From sequence record PQ741806.1: a stretch of DNA of 64,000 nucleotides; one strand, given 5' to 3'. This document shows positions 3,439 to 59,289 of this stretch, in pieces; position 1 is the stretch's first letter, and each line of letters begins with the position of its first letter. The position numbers and the translations under genes are program-made. A model generated the notes under the pieces. It was not told the DNA's origin, made no database searches, and worked only from the letters and a program-made list of their open reading frames with translations.

Positions 3439-3680
3439 TATTCATCCCATCCTTTTACTTCGTACCAGAGACAGGCACTATTGTATTCAACAATGTAACC
3501 GTCTTTACGGAGGATTTCCGCTTGACGATTATTCATCTTCCCTTCAACTGGCGTGTTCTCGTTGCTGTAATCGAAGTTTACCTCTGAATCACCAGCGAGC
3601 GCCCGTTGCTTAATTTTAGCATGGATTGATTCCATACCAGCTTCTTTATAAAGAAGTTCACGCAGCTCTTGTAATGTCAT
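3438..3680 (-). CDS. Hypothetical protein
   Basis: Stop/start overlaps with neighbours. Confidence 0.8.
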   Translation of the reverse strand: MTLQELRELLYKEAGMESIHAKIKQRALAGDSEVNFDYSNENTPVEGKMNNRQAEILRKDGYIVEYNSACLWYEVKGWDE

Positions 3681-3886
3681 GTAACTACTCCTACAATAAA
3701 GACTCGACTGATTTCATTGAGATAAGCGAGCACTAGAAGAATACCTGTCCAGATAGCGATATTCAGTGTAGTACGCTTCTCTTCCAATCCAGGATTAGTG
3801 GAATTAACTATTCGATGACAGAAAGCACCGAATAAACCAAGACCCATCGCCACGAAGATGATGGTGAACCAACTAAGGTAGATCAT
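3677..3886 (-). CDS. Two-TM small membrane protein (paralogue of 6365..6583)
   Basis: Two hydrophobic helices; shares WFTIIFV, FCHR and LAYLNEISRV with 6365..6583. Confidence 0.85.
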   Translation of the reverse strand: MIYLSWFTIIFVAMGLGLFGAFCHRIVNSTNPGLEEKRTTLNIAIWTGILLVLAYLNEISRVFIVGVVT

Positions 3887-6364: not shown

Positions 6365-6583
6365 TTAGGTTACCATCTGCTCTATATAGACTCGGCTGAT
6401 TTCATTTAAGTAAGCGAGTGCCAATAGAATACCAGCCCAAATAACAATTTTTCGAGTAGTCTGTTTTTCTATTACACCTGGGTGTGATTCACGAATACTA
6501 CGGTGACAAAATACATAAAACAGACATAGACTCATTGTAACAAAGATAATGGTAAACCATCCCAGATAGATCATTTTCTTCAC
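6365..6583 (-). CDS. Two-TM small membrane protein (paralogue of 3677..3886)
   Basis: Clear alignment to 3677..3886. Confidence 0.85.
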   Translation of the reverse strand: MKKMIYLGWFTIIFVTMSLCLFYVFCHRSIRESHPGVIEKQTTRKIVIWAGILLALAYLNEISRVYIEQMVT

Positions 6584-12107: not shown

Positions 12108-12160
12108 CCTTTTTACATTAATTGAAGGTTAAATATCAAGTTAGTAATATACTGTTTAAA
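12108..12160 (-). repeat. 53-bp early promoter/leader/RBS duplication, copy 1
   Basis: Identical to 13959..14011. Confidence 0.95.
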
Positions 12161-13958: not shown

Positions 13959-14011
13959 CCTTTTTACATTAATTGAAGGTTAAATATCAAGTTAGTAATA
14001 TACTGTTTAAA
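13959..14011 (-). repeat. 53-bp early promoter/leader/RBS duplication, copy 2
   Basis: Identical to 12108..12160. Confidence 0.95.
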
Positions 14012-14499: not shown

Positions 14500-14527
14500 G
14501 TAATATACCCTTTAAATAGGTTTGAAT
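14500..14527 (-). promoter_or_regulatory. phiKZ-type early promoter
   Basis: TATTCAAACCTATTTAAAGGGTATATTAC. Confidence 0.8.
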
Positions 14528-19237: not shown

Positions 19238-20401
19238 ATGTCTACTAAATCACAACTACCAAAGAAAATCTTCAATGCGGCTAAGAGTGATTATCATCTA
19301 CCAGAAATTATTCTTGGAGATGACCCAGGTCTACTAGATTCAATCCACACTCATTATCCTAAAATGTGGGACCTATATAAGCGTCTAAAAATGCTTGATT
19401 GGGATGAGTTAGAATTTGACTTTTCTACTTGTCTAGTAGAATTTGAAACATGTGATAAATCAACTTATGACATGATGATTAAGACACTGGCGTGGCAATG
19501 GGAAGCTGACTCTGTAGCCAGTCGTTCCATTGTTAATATTCTATCACCTGTCATGACTGATTCACGAGTATGGGCAGGATATGTACGTATTAATGATAAT
19601 GAAGACGTACATGCTTTAACTTATTCTGAGATTGTACGTAATAGCTTTAAAGATCCTAAAGTTATTCTAGATGAAATTCTTAGGGTAGAAGAAGCACAAG
19701 AACGAATGGTTGCAGTAGCCCGCACTATGGGTGAAGCACATGACGCAGTTCACGCGTATGCTCTTAATCAGGTACCCAATGATCAAGAACTTTACAATAA
19801 GGTATTCATGTTCTTCATCGCTCTATATTTCCTTGAGCGTATTCAGTTCATGGCATCCTTTGCTGTAACTTTCGCTATTGGCCGCACCGGTGCATTCCAG
19901 CAAATTGCAGCTGCTGTTAAGAAGATTGCCCAAGACGAATTCGAAATCCATGCGCAGTATGGTCAAGAAGTTATTCGTGCACTACTGGCAACTGAACGTG
20001 GTAAACTCGCTTACAGCCAATGTAAAGATAAAATCATTGAACTACTATGGGAAATTGTAAAGACTGAAGTTACCTGGGTTAATTATCTATTCTCTGAAGG
20101 TCGTGAACTGACTGGTGTTAATGCGACTAAACTTATTAACTGGGTACTTTTCAATGCTAATGCCGCAGCAACATTCCTAAGTATTGAAAATGATGTTGTA
20201 GAACAGTATCAAGTAGAGTTTAAAGAATCAGCTGGATTTGATTTTGTTTGGCCAGAGAAGAACCCACTTCTTTATATGGAAGACTACCTAGATATTTCAT
20301 CAACCCAAGCATCTCCTCAGGAAGAAGAGAAGCCTGATTACATGGTCAACGTTGTAAATGATGTTGGTGAAGAAGAAGAATTTGAGGTTGACTTCTTATG
20401 A
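19238..20401 (+). CDS. nrdB: Ribonucleotide reductase class Ia beta subunit
   Basis: WEADSV, EDVHALTY (ligands plus radical Tyr), LERIQF, DEFEIH. Confidence 0.95.
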   Translation: MSTKSQLPKKIFNAAKSDYHLPEIILGDDPGLLDSIHTHYPKMWDLYKRLKMLDWDELEFDFSTCLVEFETCDKSTYDMMIKTLAWQWEADSVASRSIVNILSPVMTDSRVWAGYVRINDNEDVHALTYSEIVRNSFKDPKVILDEILRVEEAQERMVAVARTMGEAHDAVHAYALNQVPNDQELYNKVFMFFIALYFLERIQFMASFAVTFAIGRTGAFQQIAAAVKKIAQDEFEIHAQYGQEVIRALLATERGKLAYSQCKDKIIELLWEIVKTEVTWVNYLFSEGRELTGVNATKLINWVLFNANAAATFLSIENDVVEQYQVEFKESAGFDFVWPEKNPLLYMEDYLDISSTQASPQEEEKPDYMVNVVNDVGEEEEFEVDFL

Positions 20402-20811
20402 TTAAGATTATCGCATTCGTAGTTTTAATATGGTCTACTGTTCTATTTGCAGCAACTGAAGTAAAATCAACTACAGATGGTATTATTGCACATTCAGAAT
20501 GTCAGCTAGTTGCTAAAGATAGTAGTGTTGTCGGTACTACTGTTGGAGGTGCAGTTGGAGCCACCGCAGGCGCTGTATTAGGTCGAGCAATCTTTGGTAA
20601 ATCTGGAGGTTGGGTAGGTGGTTTAATCGGTGGTGCCGCTGGCGGTGCAGTCGGTAATAATGTTAGTGCTACTGAAACATTCCAATGTAAACTGATTGTT
20701 AATACAGATGGCAAGCAGTACATGGTTCAAACAGTTACCAATGAAAAACCAAAGGTTGGTGATAAAGTCACTGTTGTTGAAATGAATGATGGTACACGGG
20801 ATATAATGTAG
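20398..20811 (+). CDS. Secreted glycine-zipper 2TM protein (YcfJ/SlyB-like)
   Basis: Signal peptide then GGAVGATAGAVLG...GGLIGGAAGGAVG; C-terminal VGDKV strand. Confidence 0.85.
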   Translation: MIKIIAFVVLIWSTVLFAATEVKSTTDGIIAHSECQLVAKDSSVVGTTVGGAVGATAGAVLGRAIFGKSGGWVGGLIGGAAGGAVGNNVSATETFQCKLIVNTDGKQYMVQTVTNEKPKVGDKVTVVEMNDGTRDIM

Positions 20812-38343: not shown

Positions 38344-38367
38344 GTAATATAGATCTTAAATAAATTA
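38344..38367 (-). promoter_or_regulatory. Early promoter, type B
   Basis: AATTTATTTAAGATCTATATTAC. Confidence 0.7.
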
Positions 38368-49407: not shown

Positions 49408-49436
49408 GTAATATACTGTTTAAAATGCTTTAAATA
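49408..49436 (-). promoter_or_regulatory. phiKZ-type early promoter
   Basis: TATTTAAAGCATTTTAAACAGTATATTAC. Confidence 0.85.
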
Positions 49437-51698: not shown

Positions 51699-52053
51699 GT
51701 ACCATTTTAATAGTTTTCAAAAATACTTCTTGATTATTACTATCATCTGCTTTTAGAATAACAGGATGACACATAAATTCATTTTCCAATGATACTCGAT
51801 AATATTCATTAATTGTCTGAATGAAATCAAGCGGGGGATAAATAATAATATCCTTATCTGTTTCGGCGTAATTAACTACATTTGGTTCATGTTTAAATTT
51901 GGATTTATTTAATTTATAAACAAAGTATTTTATATCATTTTTATCTACTTGTGATACAAATACAATTCGTTCATACATTGATAAATCAATATCTTTACCA
52001 ATATTGATAGACAGTGGCATACCAATAAATGAGCGTTTAATATTTTCATTCAT
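51679..52053 (-). CDS. Hypothetical early protein
   Basis: 124-aa ORF behind promoter 52093. Confidence 0.8.
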   Translation of the reverse strand: MNENIKRSFIGMPLSINIGKDIDLSMYERIVFVSQVDKNDIKYFVYKLNKSKFKHEPNVVNYAETDKDIIIYPPLDFIQTINEYYRVSLENEFMCHPVILKADDSNNQEVFLKTIKMVHEYVDE

Positions 52054-52092
52054 TTTTTAATTACCTATTTAATAGTTTAATGTTGTATTAGT

Positions 52093-52119
52093 GTAATATA
52101 GATTTCAAAAAAAATTTAA
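52093..52119 (-). promoter_or_regulatory. Early promoter, type B
   Basis: ATTAAATTTTTTTTGAAATCTATATTAC. Confidence 0.7.
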
Positions 52120-52156
52120 TGTAAAAGCCCTCTCCTTTGGGAGAGGGTTTATGACT

Positions 52157-52264
52157 TTATTTATATTTTTTCTTATGAGTGTGATAAATATAGCTAAATA
52201 GCATACCGATTGACATTGATACAGCTACCATACCCACATAGAAAAGTTCATTACTAAGTTGCAT
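52157..52264 (-). CDS. Small single-TM protein (35 aa, not in ORF track)
   Basis: [35 protein letters not shown] after GAGGA. Confidence 0.6.
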
Positions 52265-52346
52265 TAGATTTCCTCAAATAGTTTAATTTATCCCACCTAG
52301 TTTTAACCGTCCAGTCGGTTAAAAAGAGGACCCGAAGGTCCTCTAA

Positions 52347-52586
52347 TTATTTCTTATAACTCTCAGGGCATCCCATTTTGAGTTTGCCATCCTTTGGGTC
52401 TTCAGCGAATAATACTTCATCTGGACACTTCTTAACAGGAGTGTCCTTCGCCTTATCTTCCCATTCTACAACAGGCATTTCTAATTTCTTACGAAATTGA
52501 TACGTATCATAAAGAACATACGTAATCATTCCCATAAGAGAGATTACCCATACCCATGCAACAATTAGGATGATTCTAGTTATCAT
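52347..52586 (-). CDS. Single-TM membrane protein
   Basis: Hydrophobic N-terminus, two Cys in the C-terminus. Confidence 0.8.
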   Translation of the reverse strand: MITRIILIVAWVWVISLMGMITYVLYDTYQFRKKLEMPVVEWEDKAKDTPVKKCPDEVLFAEDPKDGKLKMGCPESYKK

Positions 52587-52953
52587 ACAACTCCTCGCCG
52601 ACTATATTGAAACACCCATTACTGAGTTTTTCAGTCAGCATCTCACCAAGATCACTTCCCTCGCTCTTTGCCAAAAGCTTAAGTGCGGGATCAGTGAGAT
52701 TTTGGTATATTACATCGACATTATCCAATGCGATATTAATAGCGAGTGCCTTATCACTCTGGTTTTTATCTATGGCAATGGATAGTTCATCTTGCAGTAT
52801 TGCATACATCTCCAATGGCTCACCGCCATTAGTGTAGAATTGAACCATATTCTTTGCCAAGCTGTGCAGCACGTAGCAAGATGACACGGTTACGGGTTGT
52901 GCATTAACCGACATTGCTACCATAGTGATAATGAGCGAGAAGACGTATTTCAT
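52576..52953 (-). CDS. Secreted two-Cys helical protein (array member)
   Basis: Signal peptide AMSVNA-Q, VTVSSC...NGCFNIVGE. Confidence 0.8.
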   Translation of the reverse strand: MKYVFSLIITMVAMSVNAQPVTVSSCYVLHSLAKNMVQFYTNGGEPLEMYAILQDELSIAIDKNQSDKALAINIALDNVDVIYQNLTDPALKLLAKSEGSDLGEMLTEKLSNGCFNIVGEELYDN

Positions 52954-52985
52954 CCTATTTTCCTTTTGAAAGTATTCGATATGAA

Positions 52986-53441
52986 TTAAATGAGTTCAAC
53001 AATTACCATGTGAGTGAATTTCTCACCAATATGCTTCATGCAGTAATTGCCATAATACCCGCTGATAAAAGCTGCCAGATTAGGAGTAGTCACATTGTAA
53101 CCTTGACTACGGATATAATCATGGATCTCTTTACTGTTAAGGTCATTATTGATTTTATTAAGACTATTGAATACGAATGTTAACGCAATCCAATTATTGG
53201 TATCCAACTCATCTTTTAGTTTAGCAGAGTTGTTGAGCATAAGCACACCAACTTCATCTGCGCTATGACCTTCACTCATTCGAAATACAGCTTGTTTAGT
53301 AATGGTTTCAACCATTGCACACGACTGCACAGTGAGTTGAGCATCTTTTTTACCAATCTTGATTTCAGCCATTGCGGTATTGAACATGATACCGGTAATG
53401 GCAATGAGACCAGCGAAAGCTGCTGCAATTACATTTTTCAT
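52986..53441 (-). CDS. Secreted two-Cys helical protein (array member)
   Basis: Signal peptide TAMA-E, LTVQSC...NYCMKHIGE. Confidence 0.8.
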   Translation of the reverse strand: MKNVIAAAFAGLIAITGIMFNTAMAEIKIGKKDAQLTVQSCAMVETITKQAVFRMSEGHSADEVGVLMLNNSAKLKDELDTNNWIALTFVFNSLNKINNDLNSKEIHDYIRSQGYNVTTPNLAAFISGYYGNYCMKHIGEKFTHMVIVELI

Positions 53442-53458
53442 TTTAAATCCTTCTTCAT

Positions 53459-53842
53459 TTATTTAATGGTAAGAATAGTAATTTTTTCAGGATTTACTGG
53501 AACTTTAATTTTAGATTTATGTTGGAGAAACTCAACAACCACCATAGACTTATCCATTTTATACACTTCACATACTTTGACAAGCCTATCTACTACGCAA
53601 CCAATTTTACCGGCATTTTGAGAAAAGAAAGATTTTGCTTTTCTAATAGCCTCGCGTTTCTCAAGCATTTCCATATGCATATTTTCAATATGTTTATCGC
53701 GTTGAACACGATTAAACTTACGCATATGTCGTTCGATCTTACTAATTTCAGAAGAGTGTAATGAATAAGCAGCAGCTTCTTTCAGTTTCTCATATACTTC
53801 CACTGCCATTACCACGTGATCATCTTCAAAATTTCTTTTCAT
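53459..53842 (-). CDS. Hypothetical protein
   Basis: 127-aa ORF. Confidence 0.8.
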   Translation of the reverse strand: MKRNFEDDHVVMAVEVYEKLKEAAAYSLHSSEISKIERHMRKFNRVQRDKHIENMHMEMLEKREAIRKAKSFFSQNAGKIGCVVDRLVKVCEVYKMDKSMVVVEFLQHKSKIKVPVNPEKITILTIK

Positions 53843-53855
53843 ATCTATGCCTTTT

Positions 53856-54650
53856 TTACTGTTTGATTAAATTTGACACTGCTTCTTGTTTACATTGAGT
53901 ATTCATCCATAATGCAATGTCTTTGGGTTCTTGTCCAGTTTCCACCATATCGATAATGATACGGGTATTACGTTGTGCTTTCTCACGGGCATTTAACATA
54001 TCAGGATCATTAATAATGAATTCCCTACCCATAACTGGATCTAATCCAATATAAGCTTTAGATGCAATAGTTCTCACCATTGCTTCATATTGGTCACATC
54101 CACGTTCAGTTAATACAAGGTTATCTGCATTGGCACTACCGCCAAATAGCAAACCTAGGAATCCATAGAAAAAAGTGTGACGTATTGTCTTCCAACAAAT
54201 ACGCATCTCTTCATTTTTTGTATAAAGCTTTTCCCAATCAAACATTAAATAGAAACTTTCTTTTTGGATAGAAGGGTGTAACCAAATAGGTTTAATACTT
54301 ACTTCAAGAAGTTTACTATTTGGATTTTTACCAATAAAGATAACTTCAACAATGGCTCGTGCTAAAGCATCTTTTTCTTTACCATTCCATCCAAATTTTA
54401 TTTCATCAGCCGTGATATAAAGACGTATTCCGTCACCCACGTATTTGGGTAACCAAACAGCTTTACCTAGTTGCATTGGAACACTATTAGGGATCCCCCC
54501 AACCATCCAGGTAGCATTGGTGAAATGAATAGCGACATCATCATTTAACCACTTTAGAATAGCTGGCCTTACCCAGCTATCTACCAAATTACCACATGTC
54601 AATGCAGCTAGCATAGCCATGAGTATAATGACAATATAAATACTAACCAT
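53856..54650 (-). CDS. Membrane protein fused to a secreted two-Cys domain
   Basis: N-terminal TM; internal signal-like FYGFLGLLFGGSANA-D then LTERGC...TQC. Confidence 0.75.
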   Translation of the reverse strand: MVSIYIVIILMAMLAALTCGNLVDSWVRPAILKWLNDDVAIHFTNATWMVGGIPNSVPMQLGKAVWLPKYVGDGIRLYITADEIKFGWNGKEKDALARAIVEVIFIGKNPNSKLLEVSIKPIWLHPSIQKESFYLMFDWEKLYTKNEEMRICWKTIRHTFFYGFLGLLFGGSANADNLVLTERGCDQYEAMVRTIASKAYIGLDPVMGREFIINDPDMLNAREKAQRNTRIIIDMVETGQEPKDIALWMNTQCKQEAVSNLIKQ

Positions 54651-54653
54651 ATT

Positions 54654-55013
54654 CTACTCCAAGTTAAATTTAGTACCAATTGCTTCAACACAGTTTTCAG
54701 CTAGCCTATCTAGAATAGCTCCATTGGTAAATCCTTTTCGTTTATTTACGCGAATATCAACTAAGTTTAATTTAGCATATACGGTACCTGCATAGAACTC
54801 TAAGTCATCCATATCCTTACGAGAGATCATATCTAACTGCATCATTATCTCAAATTGGGATAGGTTCTTATCATAAAGCTCAGTTGCTTTTTGTGAAAGA
54901 TTTACTGCCACATTACATGATTTCTTAGTAATACCCACTTCTACAGCGTGGGCAGGCTGACATGCAATGGACAGGATTGGCAGGAAAAGGAATAATAGCC
55001 AATTCTTAAGCAT
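54654..55013 (-). CDS. Secreted two-Cys helical protein (array member)
   Basis: Signal peptide PAHA-V, ITKKSC...ENCVEAIG. Confidence 0.8.
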   Translation of the reverse strand: MLKNWLLFLFLPILSIACQPAHAVEVGITKKSCNVAVNLSQKATELYDKNLSQFEIMMQLDMISRKDMDDLEFYAGTVYAKLNLVDIRVNKRKGFTNGAILDRLAENCVEAIGTKFNLE

Positions 55014-55025
55014 GTTGTACCTCCA

Positions 55026-55433
55026 TTATTTTAGAGTAAGTGGTTTTGCTTCAAACGCACCTGCCGCTACACAACGCTGGAAATAACCATCAATGATGAA
55101 TTTCTCAGGAGTGGTCTTATAGACTTTAGCAGCATTTGTTGCACGTGGCAAACTTGCCTCAATTGCCATTTTATCTACCTTAGACCATAGGTAAAATAGA
55201 CCAGTGAGTTCTTCAACTTTAGACTGGTTGGTCTTTAGATCTTTAGTGTTATTAAGGATATAATGAATCCTTTCATAAGTCTTCATTTGCACTTCAGTTA
55301 CAGATGCACCTTTTACAAACAATTCATCTGCCTGTTTTACAAACTCGATGCATGAATCACGATTAGTGTACATGACAGCCGAGTTAGCAGTGATAGTTAC
55401 AATAGACAACATAAATACAATTACATATTTCAT
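55026..55433 (-). CDS. Secreted two-Cys helical protein (array member)
   Basis: Signal peptide TANS-A, TNRDSC...QRCVAAG. Confidence 0.75.
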   Translation of the reverse strand: MKYVIVFMLSIVTITANSAVMYTNRDSCIEFVKQADELFVKGASVTEVQMKTYERIHYILNNTKDLKTNQSKVEELTGLFYLWSKVDKMAIEASLPRATNAAKVYKTTPEKFIIDGYFQRCVAAGAFEAKPLTLK

Positions 55434-55459
55434 AATGAATTACCTCAAAATTAATTTTA

Positions 55460-55723
55460 TTAACTATTGGTTTCACCACGAGTATTGAATTCTAAATCCA
55501 ATACAACTTTAGTAAATTCTTCCAGTGCACCACCCTCGTAGATGAGTGGGTCACTGTCACCCCGGTACATGCTACCTACCGGTACTTGACCACGAAACAC
55601 CATCAGCATATCGTTTTTTACTATGACATGATGTTCATCCCCGACAGCAATGTCTTGGATGTGTCTCCAGCGTTCACGCAGTAAGCTGCAAGCGCACCAT
55701 ACGGATTTCAAACGTTCAGTCAT
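55460..55723 (-). CDS. Hypothetical early protein
   Basis: 87-aa ORF behind promoter 55757. Confidence 0.8.
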   Translation of the reverse strand: MTERLKSVWCACSLLRERWRHIQDIAVGDEHHVIVKNDMLMVFRGQVPVGSMYRGDSDPLIYEGGALEEFTKVVLDLEFNTRGETNS

Positions 55724-55756
55724 TGTATTGCCCTCTTGGTTATTAAATTCATATTT

Positions 55757-55785
55757 GTAATATAGCTTTTTAAATAGTTTAAATA
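55757..55785 (-). promoter_or_regulatory. phiKZ-type early promoter
   Basis: TATTTAAACTATTTAAAAAGCTATATTAC. Confidence 0.8.
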
Positions 55786-55804
55786 CAAAAAAAAGATAAA
55801 TAAA

Positions 55805-55824
55805 ACCCTCCCCGAAGGGAGGGT
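55805..55824 (-). terminator. Intrinsic terminator
   Basis: ACCCTCCC-cgaa-GGGAGGGT. Confidence 0.85.
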
Positions 55825-55842
55825 GTATATTAAGTAATTATT

Positions 55843-56499
55843 TTAACATACAATTTCATTATCAGAAAATAGTTTATTATATTCTTTTAGTGCATCCCCA
55901 CCAACCATAGTACACCTGCCATAGAGAACAGATATAGCCAGATCTTTAATAGCGGGGTGACAATTATTTAACTTACTGATTAGTTGAGCTTTCTCAGTCA
56001 GATACAGTTCAGCAAAATCAGGCTTATCATTAACAATCGACCACATGTTTGAAATGGAATCTAGTAACTTAAGAGATTGACCACTCCATGAAATGCGAGA
56101 AAGTCTTTCATGTTGTAAACTAATCCTAGTTTTACGATTACCTTCGTAAGTTACATTTGTTAGTTCAGTTACTAAATTAACAACAGGGATTGAGAATAGT
56201 TTAGTTAGATCAGAAGCAGTTACAGCAGTATCCTCAATTACATCATGTAACCATGCTGCTTTATAAGCAGCGTGAGATAGGTCGAATAATTGCGCCATCT
56301 CAGCTACTTGTAATAAATGATGCCAGTAAGGTTTTCCTGAACCATCTCGCAATTGACCAACAGCAGTATGTGCCGCAATGGCATATGATGCAGCCATTGC
56401 ATTACCCGCATTGGAATATTTGCCATTACCTAGATGGTTAGTTAAGAGAATATTCTCTTTCCCTCCTTCTAGAATATCGATAATTTCATTCATTAGCAT
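55843..56499 (-). CDS. HD-domain protein, RelA/SpoT small alarmone hydrolase (Mesh1-like)
   Basis: AAHxxxGQLRDGSGKPYWHH, AAWLHDVIEDT, LVTELT, LKLLDSISNM. Confidence 0.88.
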   Translation of the reverse strand: MLMNEIIDILEGGKENILLTNHLGNGKYSNAGNAMAASYAIAAHTAVGQLRDGSGKPYWHHLLQVAEMAQLFDLSHAAYKAAWLHDVIEDTAVTASDLTKLFSIPVVNLVTELTNVTYEGNRKTRISLQHERLSRISWSGQSLKLLDSISNMWSIVNDKPDFAELYLTEKAQLISKLNNCHPAIKDLAISVLYGRCTMVGGDALKEYNKLFSDNEIVC

Positions 56500-58828: not shown

Positions 58829-58853
58829 GTAATATAGATCTCAAATAAAATTT
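58829..58853 (-). promoter_or_regulatory. Early promoter, type B
   Basis: AAATTTTATTTGAGATCTATATTAC. Confidence 0.75.
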
Positions 58854-59260: not shown

Positions 59261-59289
59261 GTAATATACTGTTTAAATATGTTTGAATA
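59261..59289 (-). promoter_or_regulatory. phiKZ-type early promoter
   Basis: TATTCAAACATATTTAAACAGTATATTAC, same core as 12144. Confidence 0.85.

What the first reader, a model, noticed from the sequence alone, without database searches (positions are those of the whole stretch)
52576..55433. Array of five secreted two-cysteine helical paralogues in an early operon
Four signal-peptide proteins and one fused domain share a mature N-terminal T-x2/3-(S/G)C and a second Cys near the C-terminus (NGCFNIVGE, NYCMKHIGE, TQCKQEA, ENCVEAIG, QRCVAAG), while being highly divergent in between. Small disulphide-bonded periplasmic helical proteins recall HdeA or T6SS-immunity-type binders. A diversifying array exported within minutes of infection suggests periplasmic inhibitors, for example receptor masking, superinfection exclusion or neutralising envelope-sensing defences.
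Basis: partly seen in the sequence, partly recalled or inferred. Interest (0 to 1): 0.7.

Follow-up and report, generated by a model that had tools for sequence, protein, structure and literature searches.

The report
Early exported two-cysteine phage proteins
A giant Pseudomonas phage of the phiKZ type makes, early in infection, a set of small helical proteins that appear to be sent into the cell envelope and held in shape by one disulphide bond; they are unstudied and their job is unknown.

Summary
The window is a phiKZ-type jumbo phage, identical to Pa_AttikonH10/KTN4. The finding covers PHIKZ247, 248, 249, 251 and 252 on the minus strand.

**Observation:** confirmed. Four proteins have Sec-type signal peptides. 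gp249 has an internal signal-like segment. Each exported domain has exactly two Cys, one near each end.

**Paralogy:** partly supported.
- gp248, gp251 and gp252 are homologous by profile comparison.
- The gp249 C-domain probably shares the fold, judged from a structure-library hit.
- gp247 forms a separate sequence family with the same design, and its model was too poor to decide.

**Fold:** a confident gp248 model (pLDDT 90) shows a five-helix bundle with paired terminal strands. Its best solved-structure matches are all saposins, but weak. No HdeA or T6SS-immunity protein appears.

**Other points:**
- gp248 probably carries a lipoprotein signal.
- The genes follow a terminator and an early-type promoter motif.
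- gp248 and gp252 orthologues were detected 15 minutes after infection, and gp248 is not toxic when overexpressed.
- Orthologues evolve under purifying selection, so the array is not diversifying.
- A sixth likely member, PHIKZ229, lies outside the window.

**Function:** untested. I favour non-toxic envelope-binding modules, most likely for exclusion of other phages.

The parts
55805..55824 (-). Intrinsic terminator after gp246, marking the upstream edge of the transcription unit
   Evidence: Stem of 8 pairs with a T-run. The same hairpin is conserved in the relative L007.
55757..55794 (-). Early-type promoter motif: T-run, AT-rich extended element and an 8-base core
   Evidence: Read. The same extended motif occurs at about six other intergenic sites on this strand in the window. 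It is conserved directly upstream of gp247 in L007. Reviews describe such conserved AT-rich motifs as early promoters used by the virion RNA polymerase (PMC7598289).
55460..55723 (-). gp246.1, 87 aa, first gene of the unit; no signal peptide; not a family member
   Evidence: It is absent from the relative L007.
55026..55433 (-). gp247, 135 aa: signal peptide (residues 1-19) plus a 116-aa two-Cys domain. Same design as the others, but a separate sequence family shared with Pawinskivirus 149-aa proteins
   Evidence: hhalign to the Pawinskivirus proteins gives E 1.2e-4, z 7.9, with no link to gp248/251/252. The AF2 model has pLDDT 58 with five predicted helices and is unreliable.
54654..55013 (-). 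gp248, 119 aa: signal peptide with a lipobox-like Cys18 and an AHA|V site, then a 96-aa five-helix two-Cys domain. This is the best-conserved member
   Evidence: AF2 pLDDT 89.9, pTM 0.79. Orthologues occur in phiPA3, Phabio, Pawinskivirus, Psa21, D6 and 201phi2-1. 11 of 16 orthologues fit a lipobox rule and 13 of 16 keep the Cys. UniRef names the protein 'Lipoprotein'. It was detected 15 min after infection and is not growth-inhibitory.
53856..54650 (-). gp249, 264 aa: N-terminal hydrophobic segment, a domain of about 125 aa with no known relative, an internal signal-like segment, and a C-terminal two-Cys domain
   Evidence: Found only in Phikzvirus. The layout is conserved in L007.
54126..54206 (-). 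gp249 residues 149-175: internal signal-peptide-like unit (basic stretch, hydrophobic core, ANA|D)
   Evidence: The purine-rich stretch upstream abuts the internal ATG, so a separate translation start is not well supported.
53859..54125 (-). gp249 residues 176-264: two-Cys domain of 89 aa
   Evidence: A 264-aa BFVD entry matches the gp248 model over 94 columns, TMq 0.68, probability 0.96. Its identity as a gp249 orthologue is inferred from length and accession series. Sequence-profile support is marginal: E 0.004-0.011, and 3 of 40 shuffles reach the score.
53459..53842 (-). gp250, 127 aa, no signal peptide; interrupts the array and is not a member
52986..53441 (-). gp251, 151 aa: signal peptide (residues 1-25) plus a 126-aa two-Cys domain; homologous to gp252 and gp248
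   Evidence: hhalign 251-252: E 1.9e-6 over 103 columns, z 16. 248-251: E 0.005, z 5.5. A 151-aa BFVD entry matches the gp248 model with TMq 0.71.
52576..52953 (-). gp252, 125 aa: signal peptide (residues 1-18) plus a 107-aa two-Cys domain
   Evidence: Its Churi orthologue (annotated short, as gp055) was detected 15 min after infection.
52347..52586 (-). gp253, 79 aa: N-terminal membrane segment and a small C-terminal part with two Cys. It overlaps gp252 by 11 bases. A further envelope-directed product of the same unit, not a family member
52325..52344 (-). Hairpin followed by four T, directly after gp253; the likely end of the unit
52157..52264 (-). gp253.1, 35 aa, a single hydrophobic segment
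   Evidence: It is followed by the terminator at 52128-52147.

Best explanation
What is shown from sequence, models and published proteomics:
- One early transcription unit of a phiKZ-type phage (promoter motif at 55757-55794, hairpin at 52325-52344) encodes several small envelope-directed proteins.
- Five of them carry a helical domain of about 90-125 residues behind a Sec-type signal.
- In the confident gp248 model the domain is a five-helix bundle. A short N-terminal strand pairs with a C-terminal strand.
- The only two invariant Cys sit at the start of helix 1 and the end of helix 5.

What is inferred:
- The proteins are exported through Sec.
- The two Cys form a disulphide in the periplasm that staples the ends of the domain together.
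- The domain comes in three formats: soluble (gp251, gp252, probably gp247), lipid-anchored (gp248, through a lipobox-like Cys) and membrane-tethered (gp249, whose internal signal acts as a second membrane pass or is cleaved).

Proposed mechanism, which is a guess: they are non-toxic binding modules that occupy protein or lipid components of the infected cell's envelope within the first minutes. The most likely purpose is to close the cell to further phage attack, that is superinfection exclusion or receptor or entry-site masking. The different paralogues would address different targets.
For: - Signal peptides and two-Cys placement.
- Both Cys are invariant across 23 family sequences that otherwise fall below 20% identity.
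- gp248 model, pLDDT 89.9.
- Homology of gp248/251/252 and of relatives in other genera.
- Fold matches in BFVD, including entries of 151 aa and 264 aa.
- Lipobox conservation and the UniRef name 'Lipoprotein'.
- Terminator and early-type promoter arrangement, conserved in a diverged relative: with PMC7598289.
- gp248 and gp252 orthologues detected 15 min after infection; gp248 overexpression did not inhibit PAO1 growth: PMC11849849.
- Purifying selection, so the genes are functional.
- The family is confined to Pseudomonas phiKZ-like phages, which suggests a Pseudomonas-specific envelope target.
- By established knowledge, early exported or lipoprotein phage products such as T5 Llp and T4 Imm and Sp typically act in exclusion. 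This is an analogy, not a test.
Against: - There is no direct evidence of export, of the disulphide or of any binding partner.
- No similarity to any known exclusion protein was found in PHROGs, Pfam, NCBIfam or the PDB.
- gp247 and the gp249 C-domain are tied to the family only by design or by an inferred library hit.
- 3 of 16 gp248 orthologues lack the lipobox Cys, so lipidation is not universal.
- The best solved-structure neighbours are lipid-binding saposins, which points to a different activity.
- The topology of gp249 is unresolved.
Confidence: 0.4

Rival explanations
1. Saposin-like lipid binders. The exported domains bind or extract membrane lipid and remodel or stabilise the inner or outer membrane of the infected cell, rather than masking a protein receptor.
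For: The five best PDB matches of the gp248 model are all saposins or saposin-like proteins: TM 0.49-0.68, probability 0.69-0.93. A disulphide linking the first and last helices is a saposin hallmark (established knowledge). A lipid anchor on gp248 and a membrane tether on gp249 would place the domains at membranes.
Against: The Foldseek E-values are 0.4-0.8, which is not significant for a small helical bundle. Only one of the three saposin disulphides is present, and there is no Pfam SapB hit. Overexpressed gp248 is not growth-inhibitory, so it is not a lytic saposin-type protein on its own.
Confidence: 0.2
2. Inhibitors of host periplasmic enzymes or envelope-based defence (an immunity-protein-like or anti-defence role).
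For: The proteins are early and exported, come in several diverged paralogues, and are restricted to phages of one host genus.
Against: There is no similarity to known immunity or anti-defence proteins. No effector or enzyme partner is encoded in the unit. Purifying rather than diversifying selection is not what an arms-race inhibitor typically shows.
Confidence: 0.15
3. Periplasmic lysis-timing factors: antiholin-type or lysis-inhibition sensors, by analogy with T4 RI.
For: phiKZ shows slower lysis at high multiplicity, which suggests a lysis-inhibition system whose periplasmic sensor is unknown (PMC12894885). T4 RI is a small exported helical protein (established knowledge).
Against: The lysis cassette lies elsewhere in the genome, and that paper does not mention these genes. 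No T4 RI structure appears among the fold matches. Five to six paralogues are more than such a role needs.
Confidence: 0.08
4. The pattern is coincidental. The N-terminal hydrophobic segments are membrane anchors or are not used, and the proteins are unrelated cytoplasmic or membrane ORFans.
For: No experimental evidence of export exists. gp247 and the gp249 C-domain lack sequence links to the rest.
Against: The signal-bearing genes are clustered (p about 6e-4) and share the two-Cys placement. Homology among gp248, gp251 and gp252 is significant. The signals and both Cys are conserved in relatives down to 25% identity.
Confidence: 0.03

Closest known systems
phiPA3 gp303, 201phi2-1 gp367 and the Phabio, Psa21, D6 and Pawinskivirus orthologues (uncharacterised)
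   Same: True orthologues of gp248: 25-40% identity, the same signal, the same two Cys, the same predicted fold (TM 0.79-0.86) and the same position downstream of the gp246 HD-domain gene.
   Different: Those phages carry one to three copies, not five. None has the gp249-type fusion. None has been studied.
Saposin-like proteins (saposins A and C, Na-SLP-1)
   Same: A small bundle of four to five helices whose first and last helices are tied by a disulphide. They are the top five solved-structure matches of the gp248 model.
   Different: The match is weak (E 0.4-0.8). The phage domain has one disulphide instead of three and an extra pair of terminal strands. There is no SapB Pfam match. Saposins are eukaryotic lysosomal or secreted proteins; these are phage proteins predicted to be periplasmic.
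Phage exclusion proteins of the envelope (T5 Llp lipoprotein, T4 Imm and Sp, P22 SieA)
   Same: Made early, directed to the envelope, small, and one member is probably lipidated. This is a functional analogy only.
   Different: No sequence or fold similarity came back from any search. No exclusion phenotype is known.
HdeA/HdeB periplasmic chaperones
   Same: Small periplasmic helical proteins with one disulphide.
   Different: No Pfam HdeA hit, and none among the top 50 fold matches. In the phage domain the disulphide joins the termini.
T4 RI antiholin
   Same: A small exported helical phage protein.
   Different: No fold match. These genes are not next to the lysis genes.

Membership tests
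Sec/signal peptidase I secretory proteins | N-terminal basic region, hydrophobic core and small residues at -3 and -1 | tested here: met
   Met by a crude rule and by eye for gp247, 248, 251 and 252, and for the internal segment of gp249. SignalP was not available.
Sec/signal peptidase I secretory proteins | Cleavage and periplasmic location shown experimentally | not testable with these tools
   Published proteomics shows that gp248 and gp252 are expressed, but not where they are or how they are processed.
Bacterial lipoproteins (signal peptidase II), gp248 only | Lipobox ending in Cys at the end of the hydrophobic core | tested here: inconclusive
   11 of 16 orthologues fit a recalled PROSITE-like rule, 13 of 16 keep the Cys and 3 lack it. 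UniRef names the protein 'Lipoprotein'. A well-formed AXA site follows five residues later, so either processing route is possible. The rule also gave a false positive on gp252.
Saposin-like proteins | Saposin helix topology | tested here: inconclusive
   The top five PDB matches are saposins, but with TM 0.49-0.68 and E 0.4-0.8.
Saposin-like proteins | Six Cys forming three conserved disulphides; SapB_1/SapB_2 profile match | tested here: not met
   There are only two Cys per domain and no Pfam hit at E up to 1.
Saposin-like proteins | Lipid binding | not testable with these tools
   -
HdeA family | Pfam HdeA profile match or HdeA-like fold | tested here: not met
T6SS immunity proteins | Similarity to a known immunity family and adjacency to a cognate effector | tested here: not met
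   No hits in Pfam, NCBIfam or PDB fold search. No effector-like gene lies in the unit.
Phage superinfection-exclusion envelope proteins | Early expression and envelope targeting | tested here: met
   Promoter motif and 15-min proteomics. Envelope targeting is predicted only.
Phage superinfection-exclusion envelope proteins | Homology to a characterised exclusion protein | tested here: not met
   The PHROGs hits are families of unknown function only. No named hit came back elsewhere.
Phage superinfection-exclusion envelope proteins | Exclusion phenotype | not tested
   Outside what this report may propose or run.
One paralogous family of five (the finding's claim) | Significant profile or fold similarity among all five | tested here: inconclusive
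   Met for gp248/251/252. Probable for the gp249 C-domain. Not shown for gp247.

The most novel reading that the evidence does not exclude
The exported domains are true saposin-type lipid handlers. phiKZ-like phages would send them across the inner membrane, or into the lumen of the early infection vesicle if that lumen is topologically periplasmic as I assume, to build, stabilise or open lipid membranes around the incoming genome. This would give the phage a membrane-remodelling toolkit of a kind known from eukaryotes.
Probability: 0.07. Interest if true: 0.85.

Novelty: new variant of a known kind. Interest (0 to 1): 0.5.

Why it matters
phiKZ is the model for phages that build compartments inside the cell, and work on it has centred on the cytoplasm. 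A 2026 review of jumbo phages does not contain the words periplasm, secreted, lipoprotein or superinfection.

A conserved early-expressed family of at least five or six exported proteins, one probably lipid-anchored and one fused to a membrane protein, would show that these phages also act on the envelope from the first minutes. The family has no Pfam, NCBIfam or solved-structure relative. It occurs only in Pseudomonas phiKZ-like phages: only 9 clusters in 1.84 billion representatives. Its target is therefore likely to be specific to the Pseudomonas envelope, which is of interest for understanding competition between therapeutic phages.

This is a lead, not a result. No function has been shown.

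Tried and rejected
- The three word-indexed homologue searches (gp251, gp248, gp247) returned only near-identical Phikzvirus proteins and short 'Klebsiella' fragments.
- Pfam and NCBIfam gave nothing above noise. PHROGs gave only singleton families of unknown function.
- A profile search of PDB sequences returned only Fab light-chain constructs, apparently matching on the signal peptide, and was discarded.
The model built from three near-identical rows had pLDDT 58, and its fold search found only itself, so gp247 stays undecided.
- A superfamily profile did not pull in gp247 or the gp249 C-domain.
- An internal translation start for the gp249 C-domain was considered and judged unlikely. The purine-rich stretch abuts the ATG with no spacer.
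- The 'diversifying' reading was rejected from dN/dS.
- Literature searches for PHIKZ247-253 and for exported phiKZ proteins found nothing specific. One search on the promoter core was uninformative. TSS supplements were not held.
- The genome between 114 kb and 228 kb of PQ741806 was not scanned for further members.
Full report
**Identity of the window.** Bases 52000-56000 are 100% identical to Pseudomonas phages KTN4 and Pa_AttikonH10 and 99.9% identical to phiKZ. Window coordinates equal those of PQ741806.1. In phiKZ numbering the finding covers PHIKZ247, 248, 249, 251 and 252, all annotated only by number or as hypothetical. PHIKZ250 lies between 249 and 251. PHIKZ253 and 253.1 follow.

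**The observation.**
- gp247, gp248, gp251 and gp252 begin with a typical Sec signal: a basic residue, a hydrophobic core and an AXA-type site.
- gp249 has a hydrophobic N-terminus. At residues 149-175 it has a complete internal signal-like unit ending in ANA|D.
- Downstream of these sites every domain has exactly two Cys, 8-16 residues from its start and 11-17 from its end.
- A crude signal rule flags 9 of 111 ORFs in the window, and five of them lie in this run of six genes (p about 6e-4 after scanning). The Cys placement has a chance of 1-2% per protein.
No dedicated signal-peptide predictor was available.

**Are they paralogues?** I collected relatives from annotated phage genomes and a diverged Phikzvirus contig from a sequencing run (L007). 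I then compared profiles of the mature domains only, so that signal peptides could not drive the scores.

| Pair | hhalign E | Aligned columns | z against 40 column shuffles |
|---|---|---|---|
| gp251 - gp252 | 1.9e-6 | 103 | 16 |
| gp248 - Psa21/D6 second protein | 9e-5 | 63 | 12 |
| gp248 - gp252 | 8e-4 | 35 | 5.7 |
| gp248 - gp251 | 5e-3 | 53 | 5.5 |
| gp247 - Pawinskivirus 149-aa proteins | 1.2e-4 | 78 | 7.9 |

- For these five pairs the reversed profiles scored at background.
- gp247 shows nothing to gp248, gp251 or gp252.
- The gp249 C-domain is marginal: E 0.004-0.011, and 3 of 40 shuffles reach its score.
- A profile built from gp248, gp251 and gp252 alone recovers the second proteins of Psa21 and D6, which were not used to build it.
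- So three of the five are demonstrably one family. gp247 is a second family with the same design. The gp249 C-domain needs structural evidence.

**Structure.**
- A gp248 model from residue 18, with nine aligned sequences, is confident: pLDDT 89.9, pTM 0.79. It has a short strand, five helices and a closing strand.
- The conserved N-terminal T-x-x-S-C is the first strand plus the cap of helix 1.
- The conserved C-terminal Cys-x4-Gly-x2-Phe is the end of helix 5, a glycine stop and the second strand.
- The two Cys and one Asn are the only invariant positions among nine orthologues. Both Cys are invariant in 23 family sequences.
- I infer a disulphide that staples the two ends. I could not measure the distance because model coordinates are not exposed.
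- Against predicted viral structures the model matches the phiPA3, Psa21 and 201phi2-1 orthologues (E below 1e-3).
- It also matches further phiKZ-like proteins with probability 0.96-1.0:
  - a 151-aa entry (TMq 0.71);
  - a 264-aa entry aligned over 94 columns (TMq 0.68);
  - the 150-aa Psa21 protein;
  - a 121-aa PS119XW protein (TMq 0.74);
  - proteins of Phabio, 201phi2-1 and BcepSauron.
- The 151-aa and 264-aa entries share an accession series and have the lengths of gp251 and gp249. I take them to be those orthologues, but I could not verify this.
- The gp247 model was poor (pLDDT 58) and its search found only itself. It predicts five helices starting at the first Cys and ending at the second. 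That is suggestive, no more.

**Nearest solved folds.** The five best PDB matches of the gp248 model are all saposins or a saposin-like protein: TM 0.49-0.68, probability 0.69-0.93, E 0.4-0.8. This is a consistent but statistically weak lead. Saposins have three disulphides and no terminal strands, and no SapB profile matches. HdeA, T6SS immunity proteins and T4 RI do not appear among the top 50.

**Lipoprotein signal.** In gp248 and most orthologues a Cys ends the hydrophobic core. It is followed by (Q/H/S/T)-P-x-x-A and then the mature domain.
- 11 of 16 orthologues fit a lipobox rule, 13 of 16 keep the Cys and 3 lack it.
- UniRef labels the cluster 'Lipoprotein'.
- Lipidation is therefore probable for phiKZ gp248 but not universal. 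A signal peptidase I site is also present.

**gp249.** This protein is restricted to Phikzvirus. It looks like a complete preprotein fused in frame behind another membrane protein.
- The basic residues lie before the internal hydrophobic core and acidic residues lie after it. This fits an orientation that puts the C-domain in the periplasm and the N-domain in the cytoplasm.
- That topology is an inference. Cleavage at ANA|D would release the domain.
- The N-domain has no detectable relatives.

**Transcription and expression.**
- A strong terminator (55824-55805) follows gp246.
- About 40 bases downstream of it lie a T-run, an AT-rich element and an 8-base core. These are shared almost letter for letter with about six other intergenic sites on the same strand.
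- The same terminator-promoter arrangement sits directly upstream of gp247 in the diverged relative, which lacks gp246.1.
- Reviews state that such conserved AT-rich motifs upstream of early operons are the promoters used by the virion RNA polymerase (PMC7598289; PMC4666361).
- A hairpin with four T follows gp253.
- In phage Churi, whose gp059 is 100% identical to gp248, gp059 was among 19 non-virion proteins found 15 min after infection in both infection formats. gp055, a short annotation of gp252, was found in one format.
- Overexpressed gp059 did not inhibit PAO1 growth.

**Evolution and distribution.**
- Against L007 the five proteins are 70-85% identical. dN/dS is 0.03-0.16 for four of them, like their neighbours; for gp251 dS was saturated and gave no ratio.
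- The 47 Phikzvirus genomes are at least 98% identical here. This is old divergence under purifying selection, not ongoing diversification.
- Copy number varies by genus:

| Genus or phage | Copies found in the syntenic region |
|---|---|
| Phikzvirus | 5 |
| Pawinskivirus | 3 |
| Tepukevirus | 2 |
| phiPA3, Phabio | 1 |

- The copies always lie just downstream of the gp246 HD-domain gene.
- A full HMMER scan of 1.84 billion representatives with gp248 found nine clusters, all of this type.
- Outside the window, PHIKZ229 (PQ741806 68258-68623) has the same design. It is 54% identical to a 121-aa Pawinskivirus protein, very likely the PS119XW entry that matches the gp248 fold. That would make it a sixth member.

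**Mechanism.**
- Shown: the sequence design, homology of three members, a confident fold for one, early expression of two, and non-toxicity of one.
- Inferred: Sec export, disulphide formation in the periplasm, and the soluble, lipid-anchored and tethered formats.
- Guessed: the function.
- I favour non-toxic envelope-binding modules that change the infected cell's surface or periplasm early, most likely to keep out further phages. That is what early exported phage proteins usually do, and the family is tied to one host genus.
- The saposin-like lead keeps a lipid-handling role alive. Anti-defence and lysis-timing roles are possible but have less support.

1. The 8-base promoter core I searched for is visible in the window. 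It also matched my recollection of the published consensus, which I could not verify in the library.
3. It derives from an enterotoxin precursor.

Noticed in passing
outside the window: PQ741806.1 68258-68623 (L011:4258-4623, minus strand) = PHIKZ229: A 121-aa protein with a signal peptide, a Cys 9 residues into the mature part and a Cys 13 residues from the end. It is conserved in Pawinskivirus (54%), phiPA3 gp269 (45%) and 201phi2-1 (39%). A 121-aa PS119XW protein matches the gp248 fold (TMq 0.74). It is probably a sixth family member and is more widely conserved than the array.
   Followed up: partly
outside the window: PQ741806.1 65695-65952 (L011:1695-1952, minus strand); also L006:1650-1898 and L008:887-1141: A second small (82-85 aa) family of signal-peptide proteins with two Cys, present in phiKZ-type, Psa21 and D6 phages.
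   Followed up: no
window 20398-20811 (+): A 137-aa protein with a signal peptide, two Cys and a glycine-zipper stretch. It gives weak NCBIfam hits to YiaD-type glycine-zipper/OmpA-like lipoproteins (E 2.7e-6, below the cut-off). It is unrelated to the array.
   Followed up: partly
window 12144-12151, 13995-14002, 14500-14507, 49408-49415, 55757-55764, 59261-59268 (minus strand); variant at 38344-38351, 52093-52100, 58829-58836: A repeated extended AT-rich promoter-like motif in intergenic regions 33-52 bases upstream of the next gene at six of the nine sites (about 200 and 430 bases at 12144 and 38344), often just after a terminator. It occurs in two subtypes. These are probably the early promoters of this part of the genome.
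   Followed up: partly
window 3677-3886 and 6365-6574 (minus strand): Two paralogous 69-aa ORFs with nearly identical hydrophobic N-termini.
   Followed up: no
window 52347-52586 and 52157-52264 (minus strand): gp253 (79 aa, membrane segment plus two Cys) and gp253.1 (35 aa, one hydrophobic segment) end the same unit. At least seven of its ten products are therefore envelope-directed.
   Followed up: partly
L013:4766-5038 (Churi gp055); L009:4908-5336 (PS119XW): Annotation differences. Churi gp055 is annotated from an internal Met and so lacks the signal peptide of the gp252 orthologue. The PS119XW gp248-like gene is annotated 24 residues too long.
   Followed up: no
protein clusters of gp247-252: Many short 'Klebsiella pneumoniae, partial' and some 'Pseudomonas aeruginosa' database proteins are identical or near-identical to these phage proteins. 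They come from contigs of 200-700 bases and look like phiKZ-type DNA carried over into bacterial assemblies.
   Followed up: no
L007 (Logan SRR33991144 contig, 6390 bases): A Phikzvirus relative 60-96% identical in protein, with the same gene order but no gp246.1. Here the promoter motif sits directly before gp247.
   Followed up: yes
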